Shown: piece after piece, positions 9,091 to 62,331 of the stretch
Layout: each line of letters begins with the position of its first letter
How positions within the stretch are numbered: the first letter of the stretch is position 1
DNA from: Paramoeba atlantica
Lineage: Eukaryota; Protista; Discosea
Direction: 5' to 3'
Assembly: GCA_977017575.1 (NCBI GenBank)
Contig: CDRNVI010000012.1
Location: forward strand, 682,001 to 746,000
Length of the DNA: 64,000 nucleotides
Program-made: the position numbers and the translations under genes
The notes under the pieces: model-generated
Seen by the model: the letters and a program-made list of their open reading frames with translations, nothing else
Told to the model about the DNA's origin: nothing
Databases searched by the model: none

Positions 9091-9127
9091 CTTTCATGCA
9101 AGCAATGCCAGCCACACGCAAGAAGAC

Positions 9128-9163
9128 CTTTAACGATAAAGATACAGTTTCTGTACCTTGTTG
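9128..9163 (+). other. Spliced-leader exon copy at the 5' end of REL-A
   Basis: Identical 36-mer, 22 nt upstream of ATG 9186 (MGVTTRAKAKE). Confidence 0.9.
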
Positions 9164-11607
9164 TTTTTTTTATCTCCTTACCTTTATGGGCGTGACTACT
9201 CGCGCCAAGGCAAAAGAATCGGGGGAAACCCCAATGATTTTGCCCCTTCCAGCTCGGCGGAGGAAGAAAGCACCCCCAGCGTCACCGTCCACACTCTCGG
9301 TCGCCCCTGCCCCCGACACCAGAGAAGGTTTCTACAAGCATTGCCGACGCACAGTCAACGCGAATCAAGTCACCGGGTGTGGAATTCCAGGGAAGCAAGT
9401 TGTCCTCGCAGCAAGCGCCGTCCACACCACATTCTACGCCTTCCCCGCCGAGGGCCCCAAGGCCGAGCATGCATACACTATCTCGGAGAGCGCGAGTGAA
9501 GGCGCACTCGTCTCGAATGTCGACTAGTCCCTCGCCGATATTAAACCAAATGCAAAGGGTCGGAGCGCACATGGAAAAAAAAGTCGGAGCGCACAGTATA
9601 TCGGTCACAACACTTTCATACGCTAAGGCACTTTCAAGCTCGCCCGCTAGATCGCCACGCACAGCTAGAGCAGAGGAGACAGAGGAACCAATCGACGACA
9701 TAGTTCTGCGCCCGTTGAATCCGACGGCACGGATACTCTCCGACGAAGAACTGTTCCACCAAAGGAAAGAACGCAAACAAGCTAGATGGGAATATCACGA
9801 AAAACTACGCAAAGAGAGGATAGCGAAGAATTCAGCTGCAGAGGCCATCGTTGCGCAGAGCGCTACTGAGCCACCCGTCCCATCTACTCCTCCTTTGATC
9901 CCTCCGCGGCTTCCTCCGCCACTTCCCTCGCCAACTCCAGCGATCAAATCCACGGTTACAATACCGGCTAAATTGTTTTCCAAGGATCTTCTGTCAAACA
10001 TTTTTTGTCGCCGCGCAAAAAAACACCCGGAAAGTGATACGACCGCGATACTGACCGCGATCAGCCAGGTGGAAACACCCAATACGTCAAAGGTCAACGG
10101 GATGGAGCCCCACACTCCCATGACGGGCAAGGATGACTCGTGCGAGATCGAAGAGAACCAACTGGTAAGGGAAGATCCCGCGATACACGCAGCCTCGTCA
10201 GAAACTGATCTCATAGAAACACCCCATAGAAACGCTCATCTGATAAATTCTAGCTCGCCAACGAGAACTCAGGAAATATTCCATGACTTCACCTCGCCAC
10301 CGCCAACGATTCCTTTCGACGATCGCAGCCTCGTTAAAGAGCTTATAACAAACGTATCCCCTTCGTATGATTTTCCGCTATCATCAGAAACAATTTTGAA
10401 ACACGCGAAATCGGCGAAAACGGGCGAAGAGGTCGTTGTGGCTTGGAGTTTCGACCGTCAAAACAAACTTAACATTTCATCCGGGAAGGTCTTAGGGAAG
10501 AAAGGAAGAGGAGGTGCGGCAAAAATAGCTGTGGAATATCTCGGACTTTATGGTCACCGCACCGGGGAGAGCCTTACCGGCCAACTACCCGCACATAACA
10601 ACGTCCGTATCTACAAAATTATCTGGAAGAGCGGAAAGAATGTCGAAGAAGAGCTACATAACACAGATCAGCTTAATACTACTTCTACTACGGAACAGGA
10701 TCTCGATTTCGAGCCGCTGCCCACCATGCGTACCATACCTGCCGAATATATTCCCGGAGAAGTGATGATTTTTAGAGACATACTTCGAGATTATCCCGAC
10801 AGCAATTACGAGTATCGCAATAGAATATGGCACCGTTTGATGTCTGCTACGAAACATTCCTTAGCCACAATCCGAGAAACTGCAGGCAAGAAGCGGCGGC
10901 GGAAGCCGCATCCCCATGAGGTGTCCCAGTGTTCACCTGCAGAGGAAAACCTCGAAAAGGCAGATATACGTGCGGCAAAAAAAGCTATCCGTCTTGCTTT
11001 GGAGGGTTGCACCTCCAAAGCAACAAAGGTTCTGGACATAGAGGTAAGAAAAGGTCGATTATCCGACGCTGAAACTCTTGCAAAGTTAGAGGCTCTTCAC
11101 CCACAATTGCCGTGCAGTTTCCAACTCCCCACCGATGCACCCGCTATCGCATGTGTCACATCCGTTGAATTGCGAGAAGCAGGCAGACGTCTAGCAAAGG
11201 GGGCTGCTCCAGGTCCTTCTGGCATGACGGACGGTATCCTACGCATTCTTCTCGATGACGAGACCTGTTGCTCATGCCTCTGCCACATGATGAGGGATTT
11301 GGTAAATGGAAATTATAAGTATACGTTTAGAAATTTAGGATGATTGATATAATGGCCCTTCGGGGCACATAATATTTATATTATGAGATATGATTTGTTT
11401 GTTTTGTTTATATAAGTGTACGTTTAGAAATTTAGGATGATTGATATAATGGCCCTTCGGGGCACATAATATTTATATTATGAGATATGATTTGTTTGTT
11501 TTGTTTAGAGATTTCATTTATTTAGTTTGGTATAGTGACACTCCTTCTCTAACCTTTTTATTGCGGACGCGTACTACAAGGCAGTTGCAGAAGAAAAGCT
11601 ACGGAAC

Positions 11608-14520
11608 ATGACGGTATCTAAACAATCGACGAATCGCCCGGCCTTTCTCTGCTACCGCTGCCACAAACCATTTCCGAGCGAACTGCCCGTTAAATCAATC
11701 GTCTACTCGCTTGACCCCGGGTTTTCGCGGAGGGGTGACGAGCGGCACTTCGAGTGCAAAGAGGAGTCACTAGGTAGTGCTCCCCACCCCTTACATCGCT
11801 CGTGCCTGTCCGCTGAAAAAGCGGCGGGTGATTTGTCCAGGTCTATCATTCAGCTCATATTTGCACTCTGCAGGGAAGGTGCATGCCTTTGTGGCATGTC
11901 ACGGAACGGGACTGCAGAAGCCACAGCATCGGGTGGCGGAAGTAAGGACGTACTCAAGGGCGGGTCAGGCCAAACGATCTCTAGAAGTATATCCCGCCGG
12001 AAACAAAATCAGGAAACTGGACGTGCAGTCTGCCAAGGACAAGCTAACATGCACAATTTTGAATCTACCAAGTACGAGCCCGCTAGCACACCAAATGAGA
12101 ACCCCGATAAATCCCATGTGGACGAATGCTACTTGGCTCTCAAGGGCACGACTGTGGGGAAGGCTCGAACTTTTTTGTCGGGAAAGAGGGGTACCACCAG
12201 ATCCAATACACGCCGTTTTGTTCCTTCAGCAAATGGATCTGGCACCTGCGACACTGTTGAGCTACACTTGCAATCTTCAAACCGTATTTCAGCTGAGTCA
12301 AACCGATCCTACCCCTCTCAAAATGTTTGCAAAAGCTCTACAGGCAAGAGGCGCTCTCGAACCAACGCGTCAGATGGAGCCAATCACTCCGTGGCAACTA
12401 CGCCGGCTAAGGACAAAATTATCGTTAAGCGAAGGGATCGCCGCGTTGATCTGTTGGAAGGCCGCAGCCACATGGACAGAAGTCGCAGAACTAACCCTCG
12501 AAAGATTCGTGCGGAATCAACCGAACGAAGTCATAGTCTATTGGGGACGGAACACCAAATCGACTCGTCTCAACCCGTACCGCTTATCGATGTGCACAGC
12601 CATACAAGGGGAAGGAACTCTAGAGATTGCGGAATACGTCCGGTTTATGAGGAAGGGTCAGCAGGTGACAAGCACAACGGTTCGGGAAATGGACGTGAAA
12701 ATGAAGAAAATTCTGGGCCCCGGCTACGGGACACACTCCCTGAAGCGGGGCGCGATAACGTATCTCTTCAACGAGGTGGCGCTCGGACGCGTCGCTCTCT
12801 CAGACGTGCAAAACATAGCCAAACATCAATGCATCAACTCCCTATTACGATACAACGGGAACCTGATAACTACGGAAAAGGCGCTCGGTACGCAGCGAGC
12901 TTCGGTTCTCCTACCAACCCTATAACTCAAGAGGATGTCAACCTTTGTTTCGATCAAATACCGCACGTTAGGCGATACAGTGTTATTTGCGCGCGGCGCA
13001 CTTCCCGTCTTGCACGTCCCGAAGACATGAACCTCCCCCTACACGTTAAGGCTGGAATACCCGTAATGGACGTGCAGAAAGTGAAGACTTGGATGTCCCC
13101 TGGTGCGCTTCACCGCCTGGAAACCGTGATGAGACACTTATTTGACACGCGACTTGCAGCGCAGACCGAACCAGCAATCAAAGGTAATCTTTCGGAAGCT
13201 GATGTCGTTGGTTTGCTTGACGCTGGAGTGATTGAAACAGTCGAACAGAAAGAACTCCATCAGCATCCGACTTTACAATACGTTATTCCTTTTACCGTAG
13301 TTGAATCCGATGAGGAGGGGAACGCCCGGCGCCGATTCATATCCTGGACCAAGGACGACAATATCAGATTAAAGGACTATAAGCCCGACGTTCCTTTATT
13401 GCACCCTTCTTGGTATCTGCATAAGGCTGAGGAAGAAGCAGGCGTTAAGCGCGACTTACGTTGCGGGTTCTACTAAATCGGAGTTCCGCGCGCGGCACGT
13501 GCCAAATTTCGTTTTCGTGACCAAGATGGAGTCTTGCACCAGATGAAAGTTATGCCCATGGGGCACCGATGCGCCCCGGAAATTATGCACAAACTGACAG
13601 CAGCTATCGCGTGCGACTCCGCTGTATACAAGCCCACACTGGGCTCCTGTATTGGCTCCGTGGATATTTACATAGACGGTATTCGATTTGCCGGAACCCG
13701 TGAAGAATGCATCAAATTTGTTAAATTTGTTGACGGACGGTGTGCTCAAGTCGGTGGCTTATTTAAGGAGACCGGATCCGACCCTTCCAAAGAATATGTG
13801 TTCAATGGAGTCCTGTACAATCATGAAACCCACAAGGTCAGCCTGGGACCTAAGGTTTTACAAAAAATATCGCGCGATCGCTATCGTAACATAACGTTTT
13901 CTCAACTGGAGACGGCGGTGGGGCGCCTCCTCTACGCGGCAGCGGTCTTGGGACATATCATTCCTGAGTATCATTTTCCTTTAAAGATTGTTCGACGACG
14001 GATCAATGAGCTCAATAGAAATCCCAAACTGGCGGAATATCCTGTTCCGCTTCCGACAGCAACTCGTTCTATCCTGGCGGACTGGAGGAATATCATTTTA
14101 CGGAACGAACCAATCGCACCGCCACCACACCCGGATGTCGTTCCTCATAGGCATAGTCTTTACACGGACGCGTCCGCTAAAGGATGGGGGGCAGTTCTGT
14201 ACCGGGACGATGGTCAAGTGATCATTGTGGGGGACTCGTGGGAACCGGAATTTAAATATGAAGTTAATCATGCGGAGGCTATGGCAGTTCGACTGGCATT
14301 TGAAAAACTGGGCCACCACTTTCAAAAGGGGACTTGTGTGGACCTCTTTATAGATAATACGTCGTGCAAAGCTGCCCTTAATCGTAAAGTTGCAAAATCA
14401 GATAGCATTGCGGTGGAGCTCAAACATATACTCAAAAAGAATCAGAATCTTGGCGTATGCATTATGGCTCGCTACATAAAATCTGCCGATAACCCCGCGG
14501 ACCCGATTAGCCGGTTATGA
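11608..14520 (+). pseudogene. pol: YR1 pol (N-terminal extension, RT, RNase H) with in-frame TAA at 13474-13476
   Basis: DLRCGFY*I (paralogs GFYQV/GFWQV), MPMGHR, YIDG, LYTDAS, DNPADPISR. Confidence 0.88.
11777..12925 (+). CDS. Tyrosine recombinase of YR1 (first catalytic Arg replaced)
   Basis: HSLKRGA and HQCINSLLRY motifs present; CWKAAATWTE where paralogs have CWKAASRWSE. Confidence 0.82.
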   Translation: MLPTPYIARACPLKKRRVICPGLSFSSYLHSAGKVHAFVACHGTGLQKPQHRVAEVRTYSRAGQAKRSLEVYPAGNKIRKLDVQSAKDKLTCTILNLPSTSPLAHQMRTPINPMWTNATWLSRARLWGRLELFCRERGVPPDPIHAVLFLQQMDLAPATLLSYTCNLQTVFQLSQTDPTPLKMFAKALQARGALEPTRQMEPITPWQLRRLRTKLSLSEGIAALICWKAAATWTEVAELTLERFVRNQPNEVIVYWGRNTKSTRLNPYRLSMCTAIQGEGTLEIAEYVRFMRKGQQVTSTTVREMDVKMKKILGPGYGTHSLKRGAITYLFNEVALGRVALSDVQNIAKHQCINSLLRYNGNLITTEKALGTQRASVLLPTL

Positions 14521-16438
14521 AAGTATTCAAATCAGAAATAATGTAGTACTCAAAAAAAAAAATACTATATATGTAGGCTATATATGTAGGTGTTTCAGTA
14601 GGTGGCCGCCACCATTTGCTGAAAACACATGCGCTCGGGTGGTAGTATTACGTGCGAGCGGGCTGGTTCGCGGAGTTGGCGGACGGGATGCCCGTTCGTA
14701 AGTAAAGGAGTTTGTTGTGGATTTGTTTCAAATACTGTAAGTTTGATTGAAATGGCCAGGTACCTTAATTTCTTTTCATGGATAGGTGGTGAGGATACTA
14801 AAGCAGTTGAATTCTTTGAATTGCTTTATGAAGAAAGATATTACATGAATTAGGAATTGGTTTCATTTTATTTATTCTTGTTCATTATGTGTGAGAAAGA
14901 AGACGCTGATTTCTATAAGTATACGTTTAGAAATTTAGGATGATTGATATAATGGCCCTTCGGGGCACATAATATTTATATTATGAGATATGATTTGTTT
15001 GTTTTGTTTATATAAGTGTACGTTTAGAAATTTAGGATGATTGATATAATGGCCCTTCGGGGCACATAATATTTATATTATGAGATATGATTTGTTTGTT
15101 TTGTTTAGAGATTTCATTTATTTAGTTTGGTATAGTGACACTCCTTCTCTAACCTTTTTATTGCGCCCGCCCACCAACCCCCAACCACTTCGCGGAGTTG
15201 GCGGACGGGATGCCCGTTCGTAAGTAAAGGAGTTTGTTGTGGATTTGTTTCAAATACTGTAAGTTTGATTGAAATGGCCAGGTACCTTAATTTCTTTTCA
15301 TGGATAGGTGGTGAGGATACTAAAGCAGTTGAATTCTTTGAATTGCTTTATGAAGAAAGATATTACATGAATTAGGAATTGGTTTCATTTTATTTATTCT
15401 TTTTCATTATGTGTGAGAAAGAAGACGCTGATTTCCTGTCCAAAGATATCATGCACCGAATTAAACGAGCCAGGCTCCTAGCGCTTCCGAAACCGGACAA
15501 TGGTGTCAGACCGATTGCAATGGGTGAGGTAATCTTGAAACTCGCGGAAATACTTCTTCTTCAGCGCTATGAAAAGTCTTTACCCCCACTGTTCGCGCCA
15601 TACCAATACGGGGTAATGATGAAGAGCGGTTGCGAAAAAGTAATACACGAATTAACTGACTTACATCGCTTAGGGCATGCGATTCTTTCGGTAGACCTCC
15701 GTAACGCATTTAACTCGCCGTCCCGCGACGACATATCAAGATGTGTTTTCGGTTTTTCCACACTGAGACCTTTCAGAAGGATGTTCACAGCTGAGTACGC
15801 AGATCCATCCGAGCTTCTTTTCTACGGCGCAGATGGGAAATTTGCAGGAGTGGTGCAAAGTTCCTCTGGCGTGCGTCAAGGCTCCCCTCTCTTGACGCTC
15901 TACTTTTGCGCTTTGATGCAACCAATACTCGAGACGCTGGCAGAAGAATTTCCTGGAATCAAAATCTTTGCCTTCATTGATGACATCAACTTGGCCTCAG
16001 CAAACAGTACCCTCCTGGCGAAAGCCTTCGACCGGTTACGTGCACTCCTGACGGCGAACAGCTTAGAAGTTGCGCCCACGAAATGTGTCTGGTTCGGAGG
16101 GAAGAATAAGATACAGCTTCCTGATTTACTACACGATCAAGGCATAAGATGTGAGTTTGAAATCATAAAAATTCTTTCATAGTTTACGGAGAGAATTGGG
16201 CGAATAAATTATTTACGTTATACCAGTTTATCTATTGTGTGATGGCCGAGGGGCATTGTACCTGTTGTAAGAATTCAACTGATTTGATATATACACCCCC
16301 CAGATGTAACCCCATGTGTATACAGACGAATATGACGTTTGCTATGGTGATTATAAATTCAAGACTTTATTTCCTTTGTTAATTCGCGACAGTTAAAGTT
16401 TCCGTCGCAAGGATGATCGTAATGTTGCTCGACAAACG

Positions 16439-22400: not shown

Positions 22401-23478
22401 CAGATCTGCCATCACACATCACATGCCCCGGCTGCAGAATTCTTCTTGACTCCGATTCAATCTTGACACACATCATGGGCTGTACAAAATGCGGTGGTCT
22501 CAATGCCACGACTAAACACAACACTCTGGTCAACTTCATTTACGAACTCTGTATGAAAACAGGCATTCCGTGCGAAAAGGAGCCCCGTGCACTGTCAACT
22601 TTCCGCTGCACACAATGTAACGAGATCGTTAACCCCAATCACCGAAAACTTCACGAGAAAACGTGTGGTGGGCGGTCGTTTCATCGGTCCGGTCCTGACA
22701 TTGTTATATATTGGGCAACCGGCGAGATATACTACGATCTAACAGTCATCCACGAATTGGCACCCTCAAACCTTGACACAAAGTGTGCACATTTATTCCG
22801 CGACGCCTGTCGACGAAAACATGACACATACGTCAAGACCGGGAAGATCATGGCTGAAAGCTTTCAATGTATTCCTGTCCTCTCAGGGGGTGCAATGCAT
22901 TCAAACACGAAGGCTCTTATGGATGCTCTCGCAGATGCCTGTGGAATGCAACGCAAACGCGTTTATGCCGAATTTCAGCTATTGTTGCAGGAGCTTAATG
23001 GGGCGGTAGCATATTCACAGCTGAGTCGATACCTTCGCAAGGAGGACAAAAGTCGGGAATATGCTTTCTAAAGCACGGAACAATGCGCCTTCGCCAGTGC
23101 ACTGATTTCAATTCGCTGAGAATCTAACGCTGAGAATCTAAGAACATATAATATAAGAATGAAAAAAAAACTATAAAAGTTTACGAAAAGAATTGCACAA
23201 TGGAAATTTTGATTTTACTTGAACTTGAATATCGTGAAGTTCTGCCTGATTGACATTCCATGTGCCAGGGTTGTAGTTATATTCTCACAGTAGTCAAAAA
23301 AAAATAAATTTTGAACAGATAGCCGAGGCCAGACGCAGACGGCGACGTCCACTGAAAGAAAACCTTGTGTTTCGGTTGCCGGTCACCAGAACATATCTGG
23401 CGCAATTGTCCCAAGCGCTTTAATCAGGATTTTCGCTCGGGGGTGGCTGGCCCTGCCGCAGGCAGCAAGAGTTTATGA
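16439..23478 (+). CDS. gag: YR2 gag-like ORF in two pieces (16439-17248 and 23374-23478)
   Basis: Rejoining at the duplicated TTGTGTTTC gives CFGCRSPEHIWRNC (CX2CX4HX4C) and the ending GSKSL*, matching YR3 gag GGKSL*. Confidence 0.78.
17444..17650. repeat. Two adjacent 18-bp minisatellite variants
   Basis: (GAAGACCTTTGTTTTTTT) about x4 at 17444-17517; TTAAGACAACGTTTTTTA and GTAAGACCATCGTTTTTT units at 17571-17650. Confidence 0.88.
18567..19049. mobile_element. MITE (non-autonomous DNA transposon), 483 bp
   Basis: Terminal inverted repeats GGGGGGACCTTCGATGAA(T/G)CTTCATCGAAAG; flanked by TA on both sides (or CTA if the right terminus is one C shorter); no ORF. Confidence 0.82.
19350..19810 (-). 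mobile_element. Solo YR footprint (A-spacer-B), near-identical to YR3 termini
   Basis: Matches 50297-50757 apart from a few substitutions; removal restores CAG GAA G|GT ACG in frame. Confidence 0.93.
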
Positions 23479-26400
23479 CTAAACCCCACCCAAACGGCCA
23501 GTACTATAATTACATTCAAACGAAAACAAACAAGCCTTTTTACGCAAGCCCCGAAGCGGAGGAGAGTGGAATGCAATTTGGTTGTGAAGGATGTTCAGAA
23601 CTTAAGCGGGAGGTGCGTGCAATCCGAGAGTATTTACGGCGGAACTTTGAGTCTACAGCAGGCGTGTCCAGCACGCTTCAAATTGGTGAAATTGTTAATG
23701 AGGGTGTCCACACTGACACCGGAAATACGAAACGCATTGGATGCCATGGGAGAGATGTGGAGCACAACAACGTGGCAAGCGAGGGCTCGCTTGTGGGAAA
23801 GACTGACAATGTTTTGTCAGTGGAGGGGAATAGAGGTCACCCCAATTCACGCGGTCGCATTTATCGCAAGTTTGCCAATTCGAATCCAAGCAAAGTTAAC
23901 GTACGCACGCAGCCTTGCATCAATTCTCAACCTGGCAGGGCAAGTGGTGAATCCTCTGCGCTTCTACGTAAAATCATTGATGGCCGAGGGGGCGACGGAG
24001 CCGCTACGCCAGATGACCCCATTGACTCTGACCGATCTAAATCAACTGTGGCTCCATCTACCGGACAGCGAAAGACATACCTTGCTACTTTGTTGGAAGG
24101 CAGCAAGTCGGTGGTCAGAGACGGCAGTGTTGACCCGAGACAAGTTTCACGAGATATCGCCTACCAGGATAGTGATTTGGTGGGGGCGCCACACAAAAAC
24201 GTCTCGCTTCAATCCTTACCGCCCGTCAATGTATACGGTAGTGGAAGGTCCGGGAACGAGCCGGCTGGCGAACTATATTTCCAGACTTGGGGGGTACCAG
24301 CCAATGTCTCGAACAACGGTATCCGAAGCGGATCGCCAAATAAGGCGCATTTTGGGGGAAGGATTCGGGACGCACTCTGCCAAGAGGGGGGCGATAACTC
24401 AGTTGTTCGCCGAGGTCGCAAAGGGGGGTACGAGCCTCGAGGAAGTACAGCGGTTAGCGAAGCATCAGTCGCTGGAGTCACTCCTAAGATACAATGCAGA
24501 CCCCGCTACGACGGCGCTAGCGCTGGGTACGCAGAACGCGACAAGCCGGTTAAACATAATGTAGACGCTGATTTAGTTTTTCGCAAGTTTTTGGAGGACA
24601 TTCCTCACGAGAAAGTTCGGCATACGATCACACGTACACGACGCACTTCGAAAGTAGCGCTCCCAAAAGATTTTTCCATCCCATTGCATGTGAGAAAAGG
24701 TATTCCACGCATTGAAGTGCAAGCCCTCAGGAATATGATGAATGAGACTGCGGGAGCTCGATTCGATGAGACGTGGAATACGTTGTTATCTTTACCAGGG
24801 GTGGCATCTCGGGTTCCCACATATCGATCTTTCTTGCCGGAGGGAGATGTAAAGGAGTTGGTCGACGCGGGTTTCGTTTCGCGTGTGGATGCAGAACAGG
24901 AGAGTAGTCGCCCCACGATGGATTGGGTAATCCCTTTCACTGTTGTTGAACCGGCCGATGATGGCTCCGAGAGAAGACGTTTTATTGCATGGACACAGGA
25001 GGATAATGAGCGGATTAAGGAGAGTTACGTGCCATATGTTCCTGTGAGACACGCAGCTTTCTATCTACACCGCGCGAAGGAACAGAGTGCGGTGAAGCGT
25101 GATCTTGCGTGCGGATTTTGGCAGGTCGCAATTCCGTTATCATGCCGTCAAAAATTTCGTTTCGTGAATAAAATGGGGGACCTGTATGAGATGACGGTGA
25201 TGCCGATGGGCCACCGGTGTGCACCGGAGCTGATGCACGCATTAACTGCAACGCTGGCTGGAGATAGAGAATATTGTGAGAACAAGATGGCGTTTTTTCA
25301 TGGAGGCCTCGATACTTATATCGATGGAATTCGATTTGCAGGGAATGACAAGATCACAAACGACTTTGCGCGATTCGTGGACGATAGGATACAACATTGC
25401 CGCAGCCGAGCTCACCACCAAGTCAATCTGACAAAATTATGGCAAATAAACCCTCCTTCTATGATACCCTTGCGGCGCACTTCCCTTCACGGTTTCCAAC
25501 GAGAGCCGCACGTAACCGTCGACCGCTCCATTCTCCGCCGCTTCTGAACTCCTCCGCCCCCTCAGCTCTACCGCGCCCTATGCCACCCCCGCTCGCCTCA
25601 CCACAGCTAATCCGACTGAGCCCCTCTCCCCCAAAAGGTGCTTCAACGGAGACGCCTCAGCCGCCTAAAGGATTCTCGCACCGCAAGGATCACGAGATGG
25701 TCACGCCACAAAGAACAATACCAGTTGCGGTTTCACGAAAAGATTCAGAATTTCCACCATCGATCTCGTCGACAAACGTTTCGCCAAACGTCGCATCAGA
25801 ATCACCAAACATCAGGTCTCAGAAAACCATGAAAATTACAATTTCAAAGTCAAACATTCGGAGGCAAACGTTCAACGATTTGTGGACACGCATGCAGAAA
25901 GAAAAACGAGAAGCTCAGCGAAAGAACGCCTCGGTAGCACCGCGCATAGTCCAATCTTCTCCTATTAGCAAAACTCCGTATCAAGTAAATGGATGGAGTT
26001 CCATTATCACGAAATCGTGCGGCATGGCAGCGAAAACGTGCGGCGCAGCTGTCTCAACTTTGACATCGATTGCAAGCAGTCAGCAAAGCAATCAGCTGCC
26101 TCAACTTCCTAATCGCAGCCACAGTCCATCACCAGTGAAACTGCGAAACGAGGATGATTCAACTCGGATAAGGATCCAGAATGTGACAGCGGAAACGACA
26201 AATGGAACTGCGGTTACATGTCATAAATCACATCACGGGAATTCTCAAGTGAACACGAATACCCCGCCGACGGTAGCAAATGACGCCAATGAAACCAACA
26301 TCGAGATGCATCCAGATCCCAAAGACCCTCGATTTGAAGGCTACAGATGGATCGGTAATGGTTACGTGCACGACGTTCACAATTTTGATGTTTTCTCTGA

Positions 26401-31197: not shown

Positions 31198-33649
31198 TCG
31201 ACTTACTTTGAATTTGAAGATACGATACCAAAAAAAAAAAAAAATGTAGCAGTGAATATCGAGAAGCACGGGCACGGTGAGCGATACGGAATTTCCTTAT
31301 GATTTATTTTGGCGGAGTAGGCACCGCTGAAATACATCAACGTGCGATTGGGTTGTAAATGGAAGTAGGACGAGCGAATGGGTGGTCCCCGCGTCACCCG
31401 TTCGCAAGCTGGGAGAGGACAGAAGTGTTGTGGGATTATTTAATTTTGTTATGTTATGACCGGTCATACAGTATTCATATGAATTTTGAATGTGCATAGA
31501 ATTGAACGTATCAAATATCAGATAGAAGAGGGGAATGAAGATATTGTTTTGCTTAGTGCTTTCTTTCTTTCTTATAATATTTATGATGCACAATTCTCAT
31601 AGTTTACGGAGAGAATTGGGCGAATAAATTATTTACGTTATACCAGTTTATCTATTGTGTGATGGCCGAGGGGCATTGTACCTGTTGTAAGAATTCAACT
31701 GATTTGATATATACACCCCCCAGATGTAACCCCATGTGTATACAGACGAATATGACGTTTGCTATGGTGATTATAAATTCAAGACTTTATTTCCTTTGTT
31801 AATTCGCGACAGTTAAAGTTTCCCCACCCGCCAAACCCCCTAACCACTCCCCGCGTCACCCGTTCGCAAGCTGGGAGAGGACAGAAGTGTTGTGGGATTA
31901 TTTAATTTTGTTATGTTATGACCGGTCATACAGTATTCATATGAATTTTGAATGTGCATAGAATTGAACGTATCAAATATCAGATAGAAGAGGGGAATGA
32001 AGATATTGTTTTGCTTAGTGCTTTCTTTCTTTCTTATAATATTTATGATGCACAATTCGGCGCATACATCGGTGATCCAGATTGTATCAGTCAGAAACTT
32101 TGTGACATTCTACAGAAGCACCAATCAGCATTTCGTAGACTAAAAAAAATGGGGATCAACAATGTGTCCACTCTACTACTATCAAAGTGCGTAAACATCA
32201 GACACCGTTACCACATTCTGGTACATGATCCACAACAAACTCTGGATATGGCCTCTGATTTCGACGCAGAAGTAAATAAAACCCTCAAGGCTTGGCTAGG
32301 CAACCTCACGGACCGACAGATATCTTGGCTACGTCTACCGACGCGCAAGGGTGGACTGGGAGTCACCCCCATCGAACCACTACGTGAATCTTCGTACAGC
32401 GCTTCAAAATTTGCTGCTCTTGAGCATCGAAAACCCTCTTCAGCTCCGGCAACCCAAACGATGAATGCGCCAACTCCGGTTGATGGTGATTCTCGCGACC
32501 CCTACATCAATTTCGATGAGCAAGCTAGTGAAGCAAAATACCACAACAAGGTCCGTCAAGCCTTAATAGAGGAAAAAACACTTGCGCCCATCATCAAACT
32601 AGCGTCTCACAAGGGTCAATACGCTTGGCTCACATCCAAAGCTCGTCTAGTGCCTAGTTCAGCATTCAAATTATCGATTATGCCGAGATTCGCACTACAC
32701 CACCCACAAATCCCGGACGATGTTCAATGCCCTGGGTGCAAAAGTCTCCTTACGTCATCTACCATACTAAATCATATCCCTGGGTGCGCAAAATGTGCAG
32801 GAGTAAATGTGACAACCAAACACCACGCCTTAGTTCGGTACATCTATGAGCTTTGCTTGAAGAGTGGCCTCACCTGTGAAAAAGAACCTCGGCAATTTTC
32901 TTCATTTCAGTGCTCCGGATGCCAGAATAGTGTAACCGAGGAAAATCTCACAGAACACCAGCGCAGCTGTCGCGGCAGTGTCCGCAGATCTGGGCCCGAC
33001 CTTATGATCTACTGGGCAGACGGTCCGATGTATTATGACCTAACTGTAGTTCACGAGTTTTCAGCAGCTCACATAAACAAAACGCCTCAAAAAATGATGA
33101 ACGAAGTCATCACGAAGAAACGCGACCGTTACGTAACTTCTGGGATGATTGCGAATGATCGTTTCATGTGTATCCCTGTCCTTTCGGGTGGAGCGCTACA
33201 TAAGTATACAAAACGTCTATTAACAGCTTTAGCAGATCGTTGCCTTATTTCACGGCAACATATATTAGAAGACTTTGCCCTGTACCTCCAAGAACTGAAC
33301 GGGAACATAGTTCTGTCGCAGATGCAAAAATATTTAACTCCCGACAAGGAAGAACAATACACCATATAAGTTCAGACAGTGGACCAAAAGAGATGATCTC
33401 CCTCTCGTTTTTAATCAGACAGGAAAATGCATGTTTGTTCTGCTATTAAAGCTAGTTTGCAAAAAAAAAACGAGAACGAAAAACTATACGAAGCCACCAA
33501 TACTGTGGAAAACAGAGTGATGCGGAACAAAAAAAAAAGTGGTGGAAAGTTGTATTCTATTCTTTTGAATACTTTATATCCTTAATGTTATGTTATGTTA
33601 TGTGTTCAGGTTAATACAAAAAAAAAGTTTATAATAATACCAAAGTGAA

Positions 33650-33703
33650 AAGGTACAGAAACTGTATCTTTAACGATAAAGATACAGTTTCTGTACCTTG
33701 TTG
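33650..33703 (+). other. SL exon (33668-33703) with a fold-back inverted duplication (23-bp perfect stem, ACGA loop)
   Basis: AAGGTACAGAAACTGTATCTTTA-ACGA-TAAAGATACAGTTTCTGTACCTT. Confidence 0.9.
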
Positions 33704-33754
33704 AAATTTAGGGTGATTGATATAATGGCCCTTCGGGGCACATAATATTTATAT
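33704..33754 (+). mobile_element. YR1-type A-repeat fragment joined to the SL
   Basis: Matches 11331-11381 with one mismatch; the genomic copy is preceded by TTTAG. Confidence 0.85.
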
Positions 33755-33769
33755 CTAAACATGAAGCAA

Positions 33770-36378
33770 TCAAACACTCACGAAACTCAAATCTGACCAC
33801 AGCAAATAGATCACGAGCTAGTATGCTGGCTGAGAGCCAAAAGAAAGAAGTCTCCCGAAAATGTAGAGCCGCCAGACGACAGTACCACGCCCGACAAGCA
33901 TCCCAGCTGGAGAGCGCAAGACAGCGATGTAATCACTTCGAAATATTTAAAACAGCCAATGAAATATGCGACACACAGATTTCCCGGCAGGATAATGCTC
34001 CGCTGGAAAATAAAAAGGGTCAATTAATAAATGAGGCACAAGGAAAAGCTGAAATTTTTGCGTCATATTTCGAAGAGTTATATAGCGTAAAGAAACCTAA
34101 ACTAAACTTGGAACAAGTACAAGAAGACCTTGCAAGCATAAAACACCCGAATATTGGCGAATGCGTTCTGAAAACTGAACTGATAGACAATGAGATGCCG
34201 CCCACAGACAGTGAAATAACAGCCGCTATAAGGGACCTTAAGACGAGGAAATCAGCAGGAGCAGACAAAGTGACTCCTGAGCATTTCAAATGCATAGGAA
34301 TAAACACAGTGAACTGGTTTTCTGAAATTGTACGCATGTGCTGGAATAACTCACAGGTACCCTCTGACTGGCTGCAATCAGATCTTTACCCGATCTTTAA
34401 AAATGCTGCCCAATCAAAGCAAGGAAACGAGCGCACAAAGGTAAATTCGTATAGGGGCATCTCGTTAAATAGCGTGGCATCGAAAATTTTTGCCAACGTG
34501 CTTTTGAACAGAGCAAATCCCTGCATAGAACGACGTCTGCACGATTTACAGAACGGCTTCCGGAAAAACAGAGGAACTGACGACGCTATATTCATACTAC
34601 GGCGGGTAACAGAAGAACTAAAAAGAAATCGGACACCACTCTATATTGCGTATATAGACATTATGAAAGCATATGATAGTCTACCGCGAGAAGTCGTATG
34701 GGAAGTATGTGAAAAGTTCAATATTCGGGGTAAACTTCTTATGGCCATCAAAGCACTGTATAGAGGAACAAATTCGTGTATTCGATTAGGGGGGGACACC
34801 AGGAGCCGCCGATTTAAAATTCTAAATGGGCTTAAATGAGATTTAAATTCTAAATGGGCTTAAGCAAGGATGTCCGTTAAGCTGTGTACTGTTTAATGCA
34901 GTTCTGGACTGCGTCATAAGGAGAGCTCAACAAATTAAGAGCATAGGAGTAGAAATGAACTGGCGACTACCAAACGGACGTTCCCACCGCGGTGAAAAGG
35001 TACGTGGTCTGGATAAGATAGAATCGATTGCATACGCAGATGACATTGTTCTAATGTCAGACGAAAAGCACTTACTACAAAGCAGTCTGCAGACGCACTC
35101 AGACGTTATGGCTTCATGGGGGTTAACTATCAATACGGACAAGACAAAGACTCAAGTCATTCAGCCGCAAAACACAAGCGAATATATTACATTAAGTTTG
35201 TACGTAGATAACAAACCAATTCAACATTTCCGATACTTGGGTACCATAATCAGTGAGGACACGAGCCTCGACAGAGAGTTATCTAATAGAATACGATCCG
35301 CCAACATAGCTCTAAGGAATATGTCTATGTTTTGGCGAAACTTCGATATCTCGAACAGGACAAAGGCAATCTTTCTGGATGCCTGCATCTTGACAAGATT
35401 ACTATACGGAAGTGCCTCATGGGCACTTACAACTCAACAACACGACAAGCTCAATTTAGTTTACATGGGAATGGTAAGATTTGCAATGGGAATACCTACC
35501 GCAAAAGCACTAAGGAACCCACAAGGACATGCACAAGCGCAAGGCTACTCGATAAAACGTACATCGCACAAGTACACACTTCGAAGATCCGAATTATGTC
35601 CATTAAGAGTAAAAATCGACACTCGCATTATGGAATTTGCTGGGCATATAGCAAGGATGCAAAACGACAGGACTCCCAACAAAATACTTTTTGGAAAATA
35701 CGCAGCCTCATCAACCGCCCTCTCCCGTCCACCTGTATTTGAAAGAACCGTCATCTCTGCGGTTGAGAGAACAAACATGCCATCGAACATTACATGGAAA
35801 AGTATGGCCCAAGATAGAACACAATGGTCCAGGTACATCACACAATACAATTCGAAGCACAAGCCTATTACGAAACAAAAGAATAAGCGTCAAAAATTAA
35901 TGAATTGACAAAGCGTTAAATCTGAAACTCCACCGCCCGGCGTCAATAAAGAAAGGCGCTAAAGAACTAGGGCGTCGGGAGTTTTGCGGAAACACACTAT
36001 CTGGCACCACCAAAACGAGGTGCTAAGAAACTAGGGTAGTATGTCTTTCCCGTGGATGGGGTTACCCGGCGTCAGCAAAACAAGATGCCAAATAATTAGG
36101 GTAAACGCCCAGACACACCAAACTGGAACCAGCTGCTGCGGCTTTACGCTTGCGCGAGAGCTGGTATGGCCATGGGGCGCTGCAAGCATCTTTACAGAAT
36201 TGCCAGCAGTGTAGGGGTACTTGCGCACCCCGCCTCCCAAGCAAAAATGGAACCAACTTCCTACACCGAGCTACACGCTCTGCAGTTAGTTGGTGTGAGG
36301 CACCTCAGCTCTCTCTGAGGAGGTAACATCTCTTTATTGGGATATATGCCTTTACCATCATCATCATCATCATCATCA
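33770..36378 (+). mobile_element. 5'-truncated RTE-like LINE (RT) with (CAT)n tail
   Basis: ORFs 33823..34839 and 34955..35908; YRGISL, QNGFR, GLKQGCPLS (broken by an about 25-bp duplication at 34811-34863), YADD, GHIARM..RTPNKIL; (CAT)n at 36356-36378. Confidence 0.85.
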
Positions 36379-36420
36379 ATAATACCAAAGATTTCTAATA
36401 GACCGAAACTAAAAACCTGT

Positions 36421-39879: not shown

Positions 39880-39992
39880 TTTGTTAAGACCCTTTCTTTT
39901 GTTAAGACCCTTTCTTTTGTTAAGACCTTTCTTTTTATGAGAACCTTTCTTTTTATGAGAACCTTTCTTTTTATGAGAACCTTTCTTTTTAT
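39880..39992. repeat. 18-bp minisatellite grading from TTAAGACCCTTTCTTTTG to ATGAGAACCTTTCTTTTT
   Basis: About six tandem units visible. Confidence 0.9.
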
Positions 39993-46921: not shown

Positions 46922-47022
46922 TCACCATAGCAAACGTCATATTCGTCTGTATACACATGGGGTTACATCTGGGGGGTGTATATATCAAATCAGTTGAATT
47001 CTCACAACAGGTACAATGCCCC
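46922..47022 (-). mobile_element. About 100-bp fragment of the YR2-type A repeat
   Basis: Reverse complement of about 16250-16350, near-identical. Confidence 0.85.
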
Positions 47023-49169: not shown

Positions 49170-49200
49170 ACGATAAAGATACAGTTTCTGTACCTTGTTG
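49170..49200 (+). other. 5'-truncated SL exon copy (31 nt)
   Basis: ACGATAAAGATACAGTTTCTGTACCTTGTTG directly after an A-run, not followed by GT. Confidence 0.85.
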
Positions 49201-49789: not shown

Positions 49790-49861
49790 ACTCAATACTA
49801 AAAAAAATAGAGGCAATGCCGCGATTCATACTTCTCCCCCCTTATTAATTGCAAAAAAAAA
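49790..49861 (+). mobile_element. Extreme 3' end of the CRE 3' UTR with poly(A)
   Basis: TAGAGGCAATGCCGCGATTCATACTTCTCCCCCCTTATTAATTGC(A)n, reverse complement of 57895-57940. Confidence 0.85.
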
Positions 49862-50258
49862 CAAAAGAAAGGGTCTTAACAAAAGAAAGGGTCTTAACAA
49901 AAGAAAGGGTCTTAACAAAAGAAAGGGTCTTAACAAAAGAAAGGGTCTTAACAAAAGAAAGGGTCTTAACAAAAGAAAGGGTCTTAACAAAAGAAAGGGT
50001 CTTAACAAAAGAAAGGGTCTTAACAAAAGAAAGGGTCTTAACAAAAGAAAGGGTCTTAACAAAAGAAAGGGTCTTAACAAAAGAAAGGGTCTTAACAAAA
50101 GAAAGGGTCTTAACAAAAGAAAGGGTCTTAACAAAAGAAAGGGTCTTAACAAAAGAAAGGGTCTTAACAAAAGAAAGGGTCTTAACAAAAGAAAGGGTCT
50201 TAACAAAAGAAAGGGTCTTAACAAAAGAAAGGGTCTTAACAAAAGAAAGGGTCTTAAC
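49860..50258. repeat. 18-bp minisatellite (CTTAACAAAAGAAAGGGT), about 22 perfect units
   Basis: Directly visible; ORFs 49826..50242, 49845..50330 and 49849..50283 are artefacts. Confidence 0.97.
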
Positions 50259-53849: not shown

Positions 53850-54928
53850 AACGACTTTCCGCCCTGGGGGGCGTTGCCAGCCGTCCGCTGACGAAAATCC
53901 GGCGGTGATGTGCGTTTGTATGGGCAATCTTTAATCAAATGGTCTGGTGATCTGCAATTGTAACATTGCGCGCGATAAGTTCCGTACGAGGGGCGAAACG
54001 ATTGTGAATATTGACCTGTTGATCCTCCTCCGAAATATGTCCCTGTTCGTCGTAGCGCAGAGAAAGAAGTGTACCGACTACGTTGCTTTTCACGCTCACT
54101 CAACTGATCTGTTACATGCTGATAGAATTTGTCGTGCGCCCGATCATCTTTGTCCATTTTTCGGTGAACCGCCTCCACGTCTACCTTGCAAGCACGCCAG
54201 TAAGCATCACGTAGACTTTGGATTATCGCTTTCCCCAACTCCAAAAACGGACCTTCATTCCAGCCGGGAGTTTGGCGTGCCAACAATATCCACTTTCCCA
54301 GCAACTGATCGAAATTCCGCTCCTGTTGCATCTGAAATGATTTGTCCTGATAATATTGATTCAATCTCAAACCATACTCGGGAGCTTCCTTTAATTCTCG
54401 AAAAAGGTCCTTAATTCGAAAGCCGTCGTCGTTGCGTTGATCTATATGCCCCGGCCAAGTCACAGGTTCATACGGATCAATCTTGTAGGTCGCTACAGAT
54501 CCAAAGGGCTGCACGTTAATAGGCAGGGGCCGTCCGCCTTCCAACGCACACTCTTGTCCTTCGCTCGAGTGTCCCAGTCCGTCTTCTAGATCAATGCGAT
54601 AGTAATTTAACTCTTTGTGGGGAAATGGATACTCTCGATCTGGCTCCTCTTCCCATACCGCCCACATTTCCATCCCGACTCGACGTACTTTCCCGTGGGA
54701 TATTTGTTTCGCCGAAGTCGCCGCGTTCTTCCGATTCCATGCCGCCTTAATGTGCAACGAAGGATTCTGATCGCGGGAAAGAAGCAGTTGCTCACAAACT
54801 CTCGTCTTCACCACGGCCAACTCTTCTCTACTCATGGGGTTGTCTGGTACCACTGAAGGTTCACGGGACACGCTTCTCCGTGCCTCTATGGAGCTACGCG
54901 GCGACGGAGGCATAAAAAAAAGTTTCAA
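53846..54928 (-). CDS. gag: YR3 gag-like protein with C-terminal CCHC knuckle
   Basis: CYNCRSPDHLIKDC; homologous to 16439..17260. Likely ATG is at MPPSP. Confidence 0.88.
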   Translation of the reverse strand: MKLFFMPPSPRSSIEARRSVSREPSVVPDNPMSREELAVVKTRVCEQLLLSRDQNPSLHIKAAWNRKNAATSAKQISHGKVRRVGMEMWAVWEEEPDREYPFPHKELNYYRIDLEDGLGHSSEGQECALEGGRPLPINVQPFGSVATYKIDPYEPVTWPGHIDQRNDDGFRIKDLFRELKEAPEYGLRLNQYYQDKSFQMQQERNFDQLLGKWILLARQTPGWNEGPFLELGKAIIQSLRDAYWRACKVDVEAVHRKMDKDDRAHDKFYQHVTDQLSEREKQRSRYTSFSALRRTGTYFGGGSTGQYSQSFRPSYGTYRAQCYNCRSPDHLIKDCPYKRTSPPDFRQRTAGNAPQGGKSL

Positions 54929-55701: not shown

Positions 55702-57150
55702 TCAGAGTCTGAGGCCTCCTAGCCACTTTTCGCCCTTGATGTGATTTCGCAGCTGCGACACGATTGTGTATGCTGCGAACTTTTCGTTTTCCAATTGGAA
55801 GGCTTCCCGTATCACTTTGGGGTCTAAGTCAGCGCGTTTCGAGAGGGCTTTAATCAGCTCCTTCGTATTTTCGTGCAGCATTCCACAATCAGTTAGCGCT
55901 ATGCATCGAAAATAGTTTGGATCCACTCCTTTCTCCACTATGTATTTTCGATGTTTTCTTTCTATGGCACTCTCTAGAAGGGCTTTGCTGGACTGTTTCT
56001 GGTAGCTGCTGCAGAGTGTGTGTACGACTGTGACATCGTAGAGGACTTCTCCAATATCTGGCCACATTATGGCCAGATCGGGGCCCGAACGTATACGACG
56101 AGCTCTGCATGGGTGTCTCTCCGCTGCTTCTGGTGAAATAGAGCACTTACACTTCGTGCAAAAGAACGATGAATACAGACGCGGTTCCAACGCACATGGG
56201 AGTCCAGCTTTTCCACATAGATTTGAAAGGTATCGAACAATGTGTGAGTGTTTTCTCGTACAGTTCATCCCAGCACATTTCGAGCAACCTGCAACGTGTG
56301 GAAATATTCCGGAGGGCGATTCACTGACCCCGCATCCAGGACAGGAGATATTACTCGAAGAAGAGAGACTGACGGCCAGCCTCATCTTGAGCGTTTGCTG
56401 GAAGAGGTACGGGTTTACGTAGTTGTTGGTCGAGAGGAGATGAAAATTTGCTTCCTTCGAGCGCTTCATAACTCCACTGAAACGTGGTTTTGTTTTCAGC
56501 TCTGCCGCAAGTTTTTCGTGCTCGTCATTGACTAGTTTCTTCAGTGCCGTGCGTACTCCTTGTGTCCCTGTGGTCTTGTTGCCTTTTTGTTGCTTCTCAG
56601 AGTTTTCTATCGGAGCTTCATATGGGTTGAAATGCTCATCAATAGATTGACGGGAAGCTTCAAAAAGATAGCGATGTTTCAGAACTGTGGAGGTTATTCC
56701 CAATCCTCCCATTTTGCACGGCAAAGAGGCAAGTGCTAAGGCATCTTCGTCAGCATCGCACCACTTTCTTAAGACTTGTTGGATCTCTTTGTCAAAAATC
56801 TGAGCTAGAAGGAATGATGCGCCCGGTTTATGTACTCGCAGGTGATAATCGTGGCGCGGTATCGTGCAACGCTTTAAAATTGCGAGGGAAAGATTACTTG
56901 GTCCCATGCGGCTGAGTCTTCGAAACAGACAGTTATGCTTCTCCAATTTTTCGAGAAGTTTGCGTTCTACGGCTTTGTTGTTGCCTAGGTATCCTCCGAG
57001 CACTTTGATTGTATCTACGCAGTCTTGAACCCCAAGTTCCCGAAGAGAGGAATCTTTGATGTGTAATGCCCTGGATCCTTGAAAAATTTCGCATTTGCGG
57101 TAGTTTATTTCTAAGTTCAGATCGCTCGTAAGCTCTTTGAAATGCAAGAA
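55702..57150 (-). pseudogene. 5'-truncated diverged REL subfamily element
   Basis: KVLGGYLG, GGLGI, CPGC, RSGPDLAIMW..LYDVTVVH. Confidence 0.85.
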
Positions 57151-57230
57151 TCTTAACAAAAGAAAGGGTCTTAACAAAAGAAAGGGTCTTAACAAAAGAA
57201 AGGGTCTAACAAAAGAAAAGGTCTTAAAAA
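57150..57230. repeat. 18-bp minisatellite, about four units (degenerate at the right end)
   Basis: CTTAACAAAAGAAAGGGT repeats. Confidence 0.9.
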
Positions 57231-57244
57231 GAACCTGAGCCAAG

Positions 57245-62295: not shown

Positions 62296-62331
62296 CAACA
62301 AGGTACAGAAACTGTATCTTTATCGTTAAAG
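62296..62331 (-). other. Spliced-leader exon copy
   Basis: Identical 36-mer, 45 nt upstream of the ATG. Confidence 0.9.

What the first reader, a model, noticed from the sequence alone, without database searches (positions are those of the whole stretch)
33668..33754. SL joined precisely at an AG acceptor inside a YR terminal repeat
Seen: SL-TTG is followed by AAATTTAGG.TGATTGATATAATGGCCCTTCGGGGCACATAATATTTATAT, which in YR1 A follows ..CGTTTAG (AG at 11329-11330, duplicated 97 bp later). This is internal evidence that the 36-mer is a true SL and that YR transcripts are trans-spliced 17 nt into A. Inference: the second A copy (A2) lets the element rebuild the 5' bases and acceptor removed by trans-splicing, a rationale for split repeats in this host.
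Basis: partly seen in the sequence, partly recalled or inferred. Interest (0 to 1): 0.8.

Follow-up and report, generated by a model that had tools for sequence, protein, structure and literature searches.

The report
Spliced-leader fossil marks YR-repeat splice acceptor
A retrotransposon copy in this euglenozoan genome preserves, as DNA, an RNA whose 5' end was the host spliced leader joined exactly at an AG inside the terminal repeat of a VIPER-like tyrosine-recombinase element, so that AG has served as a trans-splice acceptor, but the RNA copied was a LINE chimera, not shown to be the element's own transcript.

Summary
A complete 36-nt spliced leader (SL, 33668-33703) is followed by 51 nt (33704-33754) that match YR1's A repeat 50/51. 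A second contig of the same locus (L004) matches 51/51. In YR1 this stretch starts right after the AG at 11329-11330, 17 nt into A.

The 36-mer is a true SL. An environmental contig carries it before a GT donor, next to a 5S rRNA gene, and an RNA run shows it on at least four different 5' UTRs.

After the 51 nt comes a probably 5'-truncated LINE ("LINE-B"), not YR sequence. The whole unit (33646-36377) is one LINE-type insertion, with a 13-bp target duplication, a (CAT)7 tail and a snap-back copy of the SL at its 5' end.

Most likely a LINE-B sat in an A repeat, and its read-through RNA was trans-spliced at A's AG and then retro-copied. A related element sits 3 nt from that site in another YR1 copy.

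So the AG was used as an acceptor. Use by YR's own mRNA is inferred only, because the one RNA run has no YR1 reads. "A2 rebuilds the lost 5' end" is the standard DIRS/Ngaro model, not specific to this host. Unverified first-stage notes report similar A-SL-A junctions elsewhere in this genome.

The parts
33633..33645 (+). left copy of the 13-bp target-site duplication (AATAATACCAAAG)
   Evidence: The same 13-mer lies at 36378-36390. Only 1 of 5000 shuffles and 5 of 5000 random real window pairs reach this length.
33646..33651 (+). 6-nt filler (TGAAAA) at the 5' junction
   Evidence: Read from the sequence. It is not explained by the SL or by the target.
33652..33672 (+). inverted copy of SL positions 10-30; its last 5 nt are also SL positions 1-5 (snap-back palindrome)
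   Evidence: An RNA-run contig (X5) shows the same kind of palindrome, with the reverse complement of SL 15-36 placed before SL position 1.
33668..33703 (+). complete 36-nt spliced-leader sequence in genomic DNA, not followed by GT
   Evidence: It is identical to the exon of the SL RNA gene in L005, which is followed by GTATGAG.
33704..33754 (+). 51 nt of YR1 repeat A (A positions 18-68), beginning exactly after A's AG
   Evidence: 50/51 identity to 11331-11381 and 51/51 in L004; 0 matches expected by chance.
33755..36355 (+). LINE-B body: RT ORFs 33823-34839 and 34955-35908 plus a 3' UTR with a repeated motif; probably 5'-truncated
   Evidence: Pfam RVT_1 at E 4e-13 and 2e-8. It is offset by about 240 aa against the in-window relative at 1517-4390, which has only faint APE endonuclease signals. 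No other copy at 90% identity or more exists in the protein database; the next hits are at 35%.
36356..36377 (+). (CAT)7CA 3' tail of LINE-B
   Evidence: The LINE-B-related insertion in L001 ends with the same kind of tail.
36378..36390 (+). right copy of the 13-bp target-site duplication
11314..11565 (+). YR1 repeat A1, holding a 97-bp tandem duplication; candidate acceptor AGs at 11329-11330 and 11426-11427
   Evidence: Self-comparison: 252/252 identical to A2; sequence read.
11777..12925 (+). YR1 tyrosine-recombinase ORF (382 aa)
   Evidence: The AlphaFold model (pLDDT 69) matches Cre, Xer and Tn1549 integrases: Foldseek E 1e-6, and the 50 listed top hits are all tyrosine recombinases. Pfam and PDB sequence searches were blank.
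12926..14520 (+). YR1 RT / RNase H region (frames 11608-13476 and 13534-14520; in-frame TAA at 13474)
   Evidence: RT_RNaseH at E 7e-7. Homologous to the RT/RH ORFs of the other YR elements. The T at 13474 reads C in the contigs of DNA runs X1-X3.
14667..14913 (+). YR1 repeat B1; its T-rich 3' end lies just upstream of A2
   Evidence: 99.6% identical to B2; sequence.
14914..15165 (+). YR1 repeat A2, directly abutting B1
15166..15188 (+). 23-nt linker between A2 and B2
   Evidence: It was recovered as the 'letters between' of the joint 11565>14667 in three DNA runs.
15189..15435 (+). YR1 repeat B2. The element ends at 15435 and the host LINE-A reading frame resumes with no duplication or loss.

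Best explanation
The segment 33646-36377 is a single LINE-type (target-primed) insertion copied from a chimeric, SL-capped RNA made of SL(36) + 51 nt of a YR1-type A repeat + a probably 5'-truncated LINE-B + a (CAU)n tail. The SL|A junction was made by SL trans-splicing at the AG at positions 16-17 of A. The A|LINE-B junction most likely already existed in DNA. A LINE-B copy had landed in the AT-rich stretch of an A repeat, 51 nt downstream of that AG. Read-through RNA from that locus was trans-spliced at the nearest usable AG, and the LINE-B machinery then mobilised this RNA. When the cDNA reached the RNA's 5' end it turned back on itself and copied 16 more nt, leaving the SL palindrome. What is shown: the junction, the SL identity, the target duplication, the tail, the palindrome, and a present-day example of a LINE-B-type element nested at almost the same spot of an A2. 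What is inferred: the progenitor locus itself, and that YR1's own mRNAs use the same acceptor.
For: (1) The SL is real. L005 carries the identical 36-mer followed by GTATGAG and has a 5S rRNA gene about 400 nt away. RNA run X5 has the SL joined to at least four different 5' UTRs, three of them shown running into an ATG. (2) The junction sits exactly after an AG in the unspliced A and is reproduced in contig L004. (3) It is one insertion unit: a 13-bp duplication flanks it and it ends in a (CAT)7 tail. (4) The SL was at the RNA's 5' end: the palindrome axis lies in SL positions 1-14, and the same turn-around is seen in an X5 cDNA contig. (5) In L001, the A2 of a second YR1 copy holds a 438-bp element with LINE-B-like 3' UTR motifs and a (CAT)4 tail. 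It lies in the same orientation, has a 13-bp duplication, and its 5' junction is after A position 71, against position 68 here. (6) Genomic YR1 copies (window, L001, L008) begin at A position 1 with no SL, so the SL|A join is not how the element integrates.
Against: No progenitor (a LINE-B nested in an A at position 68) was found; LINE-B is known only from this locus. No RNA read joins the SL to A, since X5 has zero depth on YR1. An invariant AG at A positions 5-6 lies closer to any upstream pyrimidine tract, so use of the AG at 16-17 is not predicted by a simple 'first AG' rule. Folding does not favour the terminal 5-bp hairpin assumed for the snap-back; the minimum-energy fold uses another stem. 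The 5' truncation of LINE-B rests on an alignment offset and faint endonuclease signals only.
Confidence: 0.6

Rival explanations
1. Template switch onto YR1's own mRNA. The LINE-B reverse transcriptase, while copying a LINE-B RNA, left it at the point now at 33755 and jumped onto a trans-spliced YR1 mRNA 51 nt from the SL junction, then copied it to the SL's 5' end. This is the reading closest to the first reader's, because the SL-A RNA would then be a genuine YR transcript.
For: It needs one event instead of two. Chimeric LINE retrocopies made by template switching are well known (human U6-L1 chimeras, from my own knowledge). No nested progenitor was found. The A piece is identical to YR1's A.
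Against: The switch point would fall by coincidence within 3 nt of the spot where a LINE-B-type element is inserted in another YR1 copy. That is roughly 7 positions out of 250 in A, or out of about 4000 in the whole YR1 RNA. No YR1 RNA is detectable in the only RNA run.
Confidence: 0.25
2. A DNA-level join with no trans-splicing. A YR element recombined or integrated next to an SL sequence already present in DNA (for example at the head of an SL-bearing LINE), and a later LINE-B insertion removed the rest of the element.
For: Other first-stage notes on this genome report YR elements inserted inside SL exons (s1-369740, s1-369743; unverified). YR elements here often nest in each other's repeats.
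Against: Canonical YR1 ends are A position 1 and the last base of B2, in three copies, not A position 18. The SL is complete to its last base and the join is exactly after an AG. The rest of A is absent beyond the LINE-B tail. The target duplication encloses the SL, A piece and LINE-B as one unit.
Confidence: 0.07
3. A chance resemblance or an assembly chimera.
For: The region is extremely repeat-rich, and palindromes can arise in assemblies.
Against: A 51-nt match has 0 chance expectation. The same junction and flank occur in a second contig that carries differences elsewhere. The unit has an orderly duplication and tail.
Confidence: 0.03

Closest known systems
VIPER / SIRE of Trypanosoma cruzi and other kinetoplastids (DIRS-order tyrosine-recombinase retrotransposons)
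   Same: The gene order is YR followed by RT/RNase H. The split direct repeats are arranged A1 ... B1-A2-B2. A short unique spacer separates A2 and B2; SIRE equals A2 + about 30 bp + B2 (PMC6681497). The host uses polycistronic transcription with SL trans-splicing. From my own memory, not checked here: SIRE was reported to supply a 3' acceptor site for trans-splicing of T. cruzi P2-beta genes (Vazquez et al. 1994, Mol Biochem Parasitol).
   Different: The repeats are unrelated in sequence. The acceptor is mapped here from a DNA fossil rather than from cDNA. Phylogenetic placement with VIPER was not tested. The YR ORF lies wholly inside a longer ORF in the +1 frame.
SL-tagged retrocopies (DinoSL relics in dinoflagellate retrogenes)
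   Same: A DNA-encoded spliced leader at the 5' end of a retro-copied sequence is taken as proof that a trans-spliced RNA was reverse-transcribed (PMC6050394, PMC5585692).
   Different: Here the SL is euglenozoan, the tagged RNAs are transposon RNAs, and no stacked relic SLs occur in this window.
DIRS-1 internal complementary region / split-repeat restoration model
   Same: An internal copy of the joined termini (here B1|A2) can restore ends that are missing from an incomplete RNA. The ICR was shown to be essential in Dictyostelium (PMC7192593).
   Different: In that model the missing 5' end results from an internal transcription start. Here the proposed cause is trans-splicing, which would also add 36 foreign nt to the template. 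This was not tested.
SL-gene-specific LINEs (SLACS, CZAR, CRE, NeSL)
   Same: LINE sequence lies next to SL sequence.
   Different: Those elements split the SL exon inside SL RNA genes (from my own knowledge). Here a whole SL exon heads the copy, the flanks are not an SL RNA gene, and no GT follows the SL.

Membership tests
DIRS-order, VIPER-like tyrosine-recombinase retrotransposon (YR1) | encodes a tyrosine recombinase | tested here: met
   The predicted fold matches Cre, Xer and Tn1549 integrases (E 1e-6; the 50 listed top hits are all tyrosine recombinases). Invariant WGR, HSxKRG and LLRY motifs are seen in 7 homologues. Pfam and PDB sequence searches found nothing.
DIRS-order, VIPER-like tyrosine-recombinase retrotransposon (YR1) | reverse transcriptase plus RNase H | tested here: met
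   RT_RNaseH at E 7e-7 in 13534-14520. RVT_1 is weak (E about 5e-4) in the homologous ORFs of two sister elements, which align with YR1's.
DIRS-order, VIPER-like tyrosine-recombinase retrotransposon (YR1) | split direct repeats A1 ... B1-A2-B2 | tested here: met
   A1 = A2 at 252/252 and B1 = B2 at 99.6%, with B1 abutting A2 and a 23-nt linker before B2. The same layout is seen in two more elements in the window and in L001 and L002.
DIRS-order, VIPER-like tyrosine-recombinase retrotransposon (YR1) | integration without target-site duplication | tested here: met
   The host LINE-A reading frame is interrupted between ...GGAAAT and CTGTCC... with no duplicated or lost bases.
DIRS-order, VIPER-like tyrosine-recombinase retrotransposon (YR1) | gene order YR before RT/RH (VIPER) rather than RT/RH before YR (DIRS, Ngaro) | tested here: met
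   YR at 11777-12925, with RT/RH downstream to 14520. In L007 a zf-CCHC ORF precedes the YR ORF.
DIRS-order, VIPER-like tyrosine-recombinase retrotransposon (YR1) | groups with VIPER in RT or YR phylogeny | not tested
   No VIPER sequence was fetched. All homologues found come from one ENA assembly or are unnamed.
SL trans-splice acceptor site | the SL exon is identical to that of an SL RNA gene with a GT donor | tested here: met
   L005: the 36-mer followed by GTATGAG, with a 5S rRNA gene at 98 bits nearby.
SL trans-splice acceptor site | AG immediately upstream of the joined sequence in the unspliced genomic copy | tested here: met
   AG at 11329-11330, and likewise at 11426-7, 14929-30 and 15026-7.
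SL trans-splice acceptor site | pyrimidine-rich tract upstream of the AG | tested here: inconclusive
   T-rich tracts lie upstream when A follows B (B1|A2) or follows the first 97-bp unit. They are not clearly above the background of this AT-rich DNA, and A1's first AG depends on the flank.
SL trans-splice acceptor site | RNA molecules carrying the SL joined at this AG | tested here: inconclusive
   The only RNA run (X5) has depth 0 over all of YR1, so absence of the junction means nothing.
LINE (target-primed) retrocopy | target-site duplication, 3' tail and an RT ORF | tested here: met
   A 13-bp duplication, a (CAT)7 tail, and RVT_1.

The most novel reading that the evidence does not exclude
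The B|A junction of these VIPER-like elements is a built-in RNA-processing cassette: the T-rich end of B plus the AG at A positions 15-17. The element's replicative RNA is itself trans-spliced there, and A2 restores the 17 nt and the acceptor at each cycle. LINE-B-type elements preferentially land just downstream in A to capture that acceptor for their own expression. That would be a transposon parasitising another transposon's splice signal.
Probability: 0.2. Interest if true: 0.65.

Novelty: new member of a known kind. Interest (0 to 1): 0.4.

Why it matters
This DNA fossil fixes, to the base, one SL acceptor inside the terminal repeat of a tyrosine-recombinase retrotransposon. It also shows that in this organism trans-spliced RNAs are routinely reverse-transcribed back into the genome. 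That gives a concrete, testable entry point to how YR elements are expressed and how they keep their ends in a host that processes polycistronic RNA by trans-splicing. This has been discussed for VIPER/SIRE but is poorly documented outside trypanosomatids. It does not by itself explain why split repeats exist.

Tried and rejected
(1) RNA test of the AG. Read laying on 9125-15110 with three DNA runs and the only RNA-like run gave depth 0 on YR1 in the RNA run, so the test was uninformative.

(2) More SL|A junctions. I scanned about 118 kb of extra contigs of the same assembly (L001-L004, L006-L010), fetched through YR and RT/RH homologues. I found more YR1 copies and more SL-headed LINEs, but no second SL|A junction.

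(3) The 101-nt piece of YR2's A at 46922-47022, which follows a poly(A) and starts next to an AG. I rejected it as a second example. It has no SL, it starts at about A position 80, and it lies between two convergent LINE-A 3' ends, so it is a remnant left by insertions.

(4) Cis-splicing at the A|LINE-B boundary. Rejected, because there is no GT at 11382.

(5) The idea that the A piece is part of the SL RNA intron or another small RNA. Rfam found nothing in the window, and the 25 nt of intron visible in L005 do not resemble A.

(6) Sequence-level proof of the recombinase. Pfam and PDB hmmsearch were blank; only the fold search worked.

(7) Literature search for the SL sequence found nothing. 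The 1994 SIRE acceptor paper is not in the held library, so it is cited from memory only.

(8) Homology between the 5' end of LINE-B and the L001 insertion. None was found.

Full report
**What is at the site**

- A 36-nt sequence (33668-33703; exact coordinates) ends in ...CCTTGTTG.
- It is followed by 51 nt (33704-33754) that match 11331-11381 at 50 of 51 positions.
- In the other place this stretch follows ...CGTTTAG, so the AG is at 11329-11330.
- A 40-mer from the stretch occurs only five times in the window: four times in YR1 and once here. Shuffles gave 0 expected matches.
- A separate contig of the same locus (L004, same upstream flank, 99.6% over 1594 nt) carries the same junction with 51/51 identity. 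The join is therefore not a quirk of one assembly, and the G at 33713 is a later change.

**The element that owns the 51 nt**

Self-comparison and direct reading give YR1 this layout:

| Part | Coordinates |
|---|---|
| A1 | 11314-11565 |
| internal genes | between A1 and B1 |
| B1 | 14667-14913 |
| A2 | 14914-15165 |
| 23-nt linker | 15166-15188 |
| B2 | 15189-15435 |

- A1 and A2 are identical (252/252). A holds a 97-bp tandem duplication, so the AG recurs at 11426-7, and in A2 at 14929-30 and 15026-7.
- The element sits inside a LINE ORF with no duplication or loss of host bases.
- The 382-aa ORF at 11777-12925 has no Pfam or PDB sequence match. Its predicted structure, however, matches Cre, Xer and Tn1549 integrases, and nothing but tyrosine recombinases appears among the 50 listed top hits.
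- Seven homologues share WGR, HSxKRG and LLRY motifs.
- RNase H follows downstream.
- The order YR then RT/RH, the split repeats and the A2-spacer-B2 tail are the architecture described for VIPER and SIRE in kinetoplastids (PMC6681497).
- The AG lies at positions 16-17 of A, so "17 nt into A" is correct.

**Is the 36-mer a real spliced leader?**

Its core (ACAGTTTCTGTAC) is the conserved core of kinetoplastid and diplonemid leaders; this point is from my own knowledge.

Three results settle the question.
- The 36-mer occurs five times in the window, each time followed by a different sequence and never by GT.
- A metagenome contig (L005) carries the identical 36-mer followed by GTATGAG, with a 5S rRNA gene about 400 nt away. 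That is an SL RNA gene in the usual linkage.
- Run X5 carries the same species label, is marked "RNA?" and dates from 2015. Its contigs hold the 36-mer joined to at least four different short 5' UTRs, three of them shown running into an ATG, at high depth.

**What follows the 51 nt**

Homology to YR1 stops at 33754. From 33755 the sequence encodes a LINE reverse transcriptase (RVT_1), which I call LINE-B.
- Its C-terminal region resembles APE-type LINEs by eye. The ORF is about 240 aa shorter at the N-terminus than its nearest relative in the window, which has only faint endonuclease signals. It is therefore probably 5'-truncated; this is an inference.
- It ends in (CAT)7CA at 36356-36377.
- The 13-mer AATAATACCAAAG lies at 33633-33645 and again at 36378-36390. 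Only 1 of 5000 shuffles gives so long a match.
- SL, A piece and LINE-B were therefore inserted together as one target-primed unit.

**The palindrome**

Upstream of the SL, 33652-33667 is the reverse complement of SL positions 15-30. With SL positions 1-5, this makes a palindrome whose axis is the SL's own CTTTA/ACGA/TAAAG.
- This is what results if the first-strand cDNA, on reaching the 5' end of the RNA, turns back and copies itself.
- One X5 contig starts with the reverse complement of SL 15-36 placed directly before SL position 1. This is the same turn-around made independently during library construction.
- Energy folding does not favour that terminal hairpin, so the support is empirical rather than thermodynamic.
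- The palindrome shows that the SL was the true 5' end of the copied RNA.

**How the A|LINE-B join arose**

A second YR1 copy (L001) is informative.
- Its A2 is interrupted by a 438-bp element with LINE-B-like 3' UTR motifs and a (CAT)4CA tail.
- That element lies in the same orientation and is flanked by a 13-bp duplication.
- Its 5' junction is after A position 71; in the window the A piece ends at position 68.
- A read-through RNA from that L001 locus, trans-spliced at the AG of A2, would have the form SL + 54 nt of A + element.

I therefore favour a progenitor in which a truncated LINE-B sat in an A repeat and its trans-spliced read-through RNA was mobilised (0.6). The alternative is a template switch from LINE-B RNA onto a genuine trans-spliced YR1 mRNA (0.25). 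That route needs the switch point to coincide with this insertion hot spot by chance.

A DNA-level join is unlikely. All three YR1 copies seen (window, L001, L008) begin at A position 1 with no SL, and the target duplication encloses the whole unit.

**Does the element's own mRNA use this AG?**

This is not shown. The X5 run has zero depth across YR1, and also across the LINE that YR1 is inserted in, so absence of SL-A reads there means nothing.

Comparison of A starts in seven subfamilies gives the following.
- The terminus is conserved: TAxxAGTTyACG, five variable bases, then AA(A)TT.
- An AG lies at positions 16-17 in three subfamilies and at 15-16 in two; the other two have TG instead.
- An invariant AG lies at positions 5-6.
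- A cUUCGg-type hairpin lies further in.
- The 3' end of B is T-rich in all subfamilies, so a pyrimidine tract precedes the AG where A follows B (B1|A2), or where it follows the first 97-bp unit. This is not clearly above background.

The acceptor may therefore work best at B1|A2 rather than at A1.

That an internal copy of the joined termini restores ends missing from an incomplete RNA is the established model for DIRS-type elements, and it has been shown experimentally for the DIRS-1 ICR (PMC7192593). Split repeats occur in many hosts without trans-splicing. They are thus not explained by this host, although here trans-splicing could be the cause of the missing 5' end.

It fits that LINE copies in this genome keep their SL whereas YR copies do not. 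A 36-nt foreign 5' extension would, however, hinder the strand transfer the model needs, and nothing here tests that.

**Other notes of this scan**

First-stage notes on other pieces of this genome report A-SL-A junctions and SLs trapped in YR elements (s1-369850, s1-381633, s1-381643). They are unverified and I could not reach those sequences. If correct, they would bear directly on this point.

**Verdict**

- It is good evidence that the AG at A positions 16-17 has served as a trans-splice acceptor.
- It is a retro-copied LINE chimera, not a YR copy.
- It is a new instance of known things: acceptor sites in VIPER/SIRE-type repeats, and SL-tagged retrocopies.

Noticed in passing
window 9128-9163(+), 7578-7613(-), 62296-62331(-), 49170-49200(+, lacks the first 5 nt); L007 about 14760(-), L002 about 898(-), L006 about 9428(+), L010 about 21102(+), L008 about 4092(+): Whole or 5'-truncated SL copies head several different LINE families. 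In the most common family, diverged subfamilies all show the SL, then a short T-rich leader, then ATG GG. The SL therefore seems to be kept as the element's 5' end through many cycles. How it is regenerated is open: new trans-splicing, or an internal promoter starting at the SL copy. Three of the five SL heads in the window lie directly after the 3' end or poly(A) of another LINE.
   Followed up: partly
L005 about 61-26 (-) compared with all genomic SL copies: The SL RNA gene reads ...gtagtaaCTTTAACG. If the exon starts AAC as in kinetoplastids, every retro-copied SL lacks the first two A's and starts at C. That would be expected if cap-proximal modified bases stop the reverse transcriptase.
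   Followed up: no
window 11539-13473 vs 11774-12922; 23424-25544 vs 23479-24561; 51036-53930(-) vs 52685-53845(-): In three diverged YR subfamilies the whole recombinase ORF lies inside a longer open frame that continues into RT. The offset is +1 in all three cases, which suggests a conserved overprinted gene pair. First-stage note s1-369890 flags the same thing.
   Followed up: partly
window 46922-47022(-): A 101-nt piece of YR2's A repeat (matching 16250-16350, 99%) is stranded between the poly(A) of one LINE and the 3' end of a convergent LINE. It has no SL and is a remnant of an A repeat hit by two insertions.
   Followed up: yes
window 8971-9090, 49860-50258, 39880-39989(-), 57140-57233; L008 about 8140-8162: An 18-bp satellite (unit TCTTAACAAAAGAAAGGG) recurs at LINE 3' ends. 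A third YR1 copy (L008) is inserted in it. Compare note s1-369855.
   Followed up: no
window 11355-11367 and equivalents in other YR subfamilies: A conserved hairpin lies in A: GGCCC-TTCG-GGGC, a cUUCGg tetraloop. In YR2 and YR3 the loop differs and the stem is shorter (GGCC-GA-GGGGC, GGCC-GAC-GGGC). It may be an RNA or DNA structural signal of the element.
   Followed up: no
window 13474-13476: The in-frame TAA that splits YR1's RT/RH frame reads CAA in the contigs of three DNA runs, and L001's copy has a 642-aa ORF across it. The family therefore looks recently active. A1 and A2 are also 100% identical.
   Followed up: partly
L001 about 7154, L008 about 8242: YR elements of other subfamilies are inserted within YR1: in the internal region in L001, and in A1 at about position 79 in L008. 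Nesting of YR elements in one another is common.
   Followed up: no
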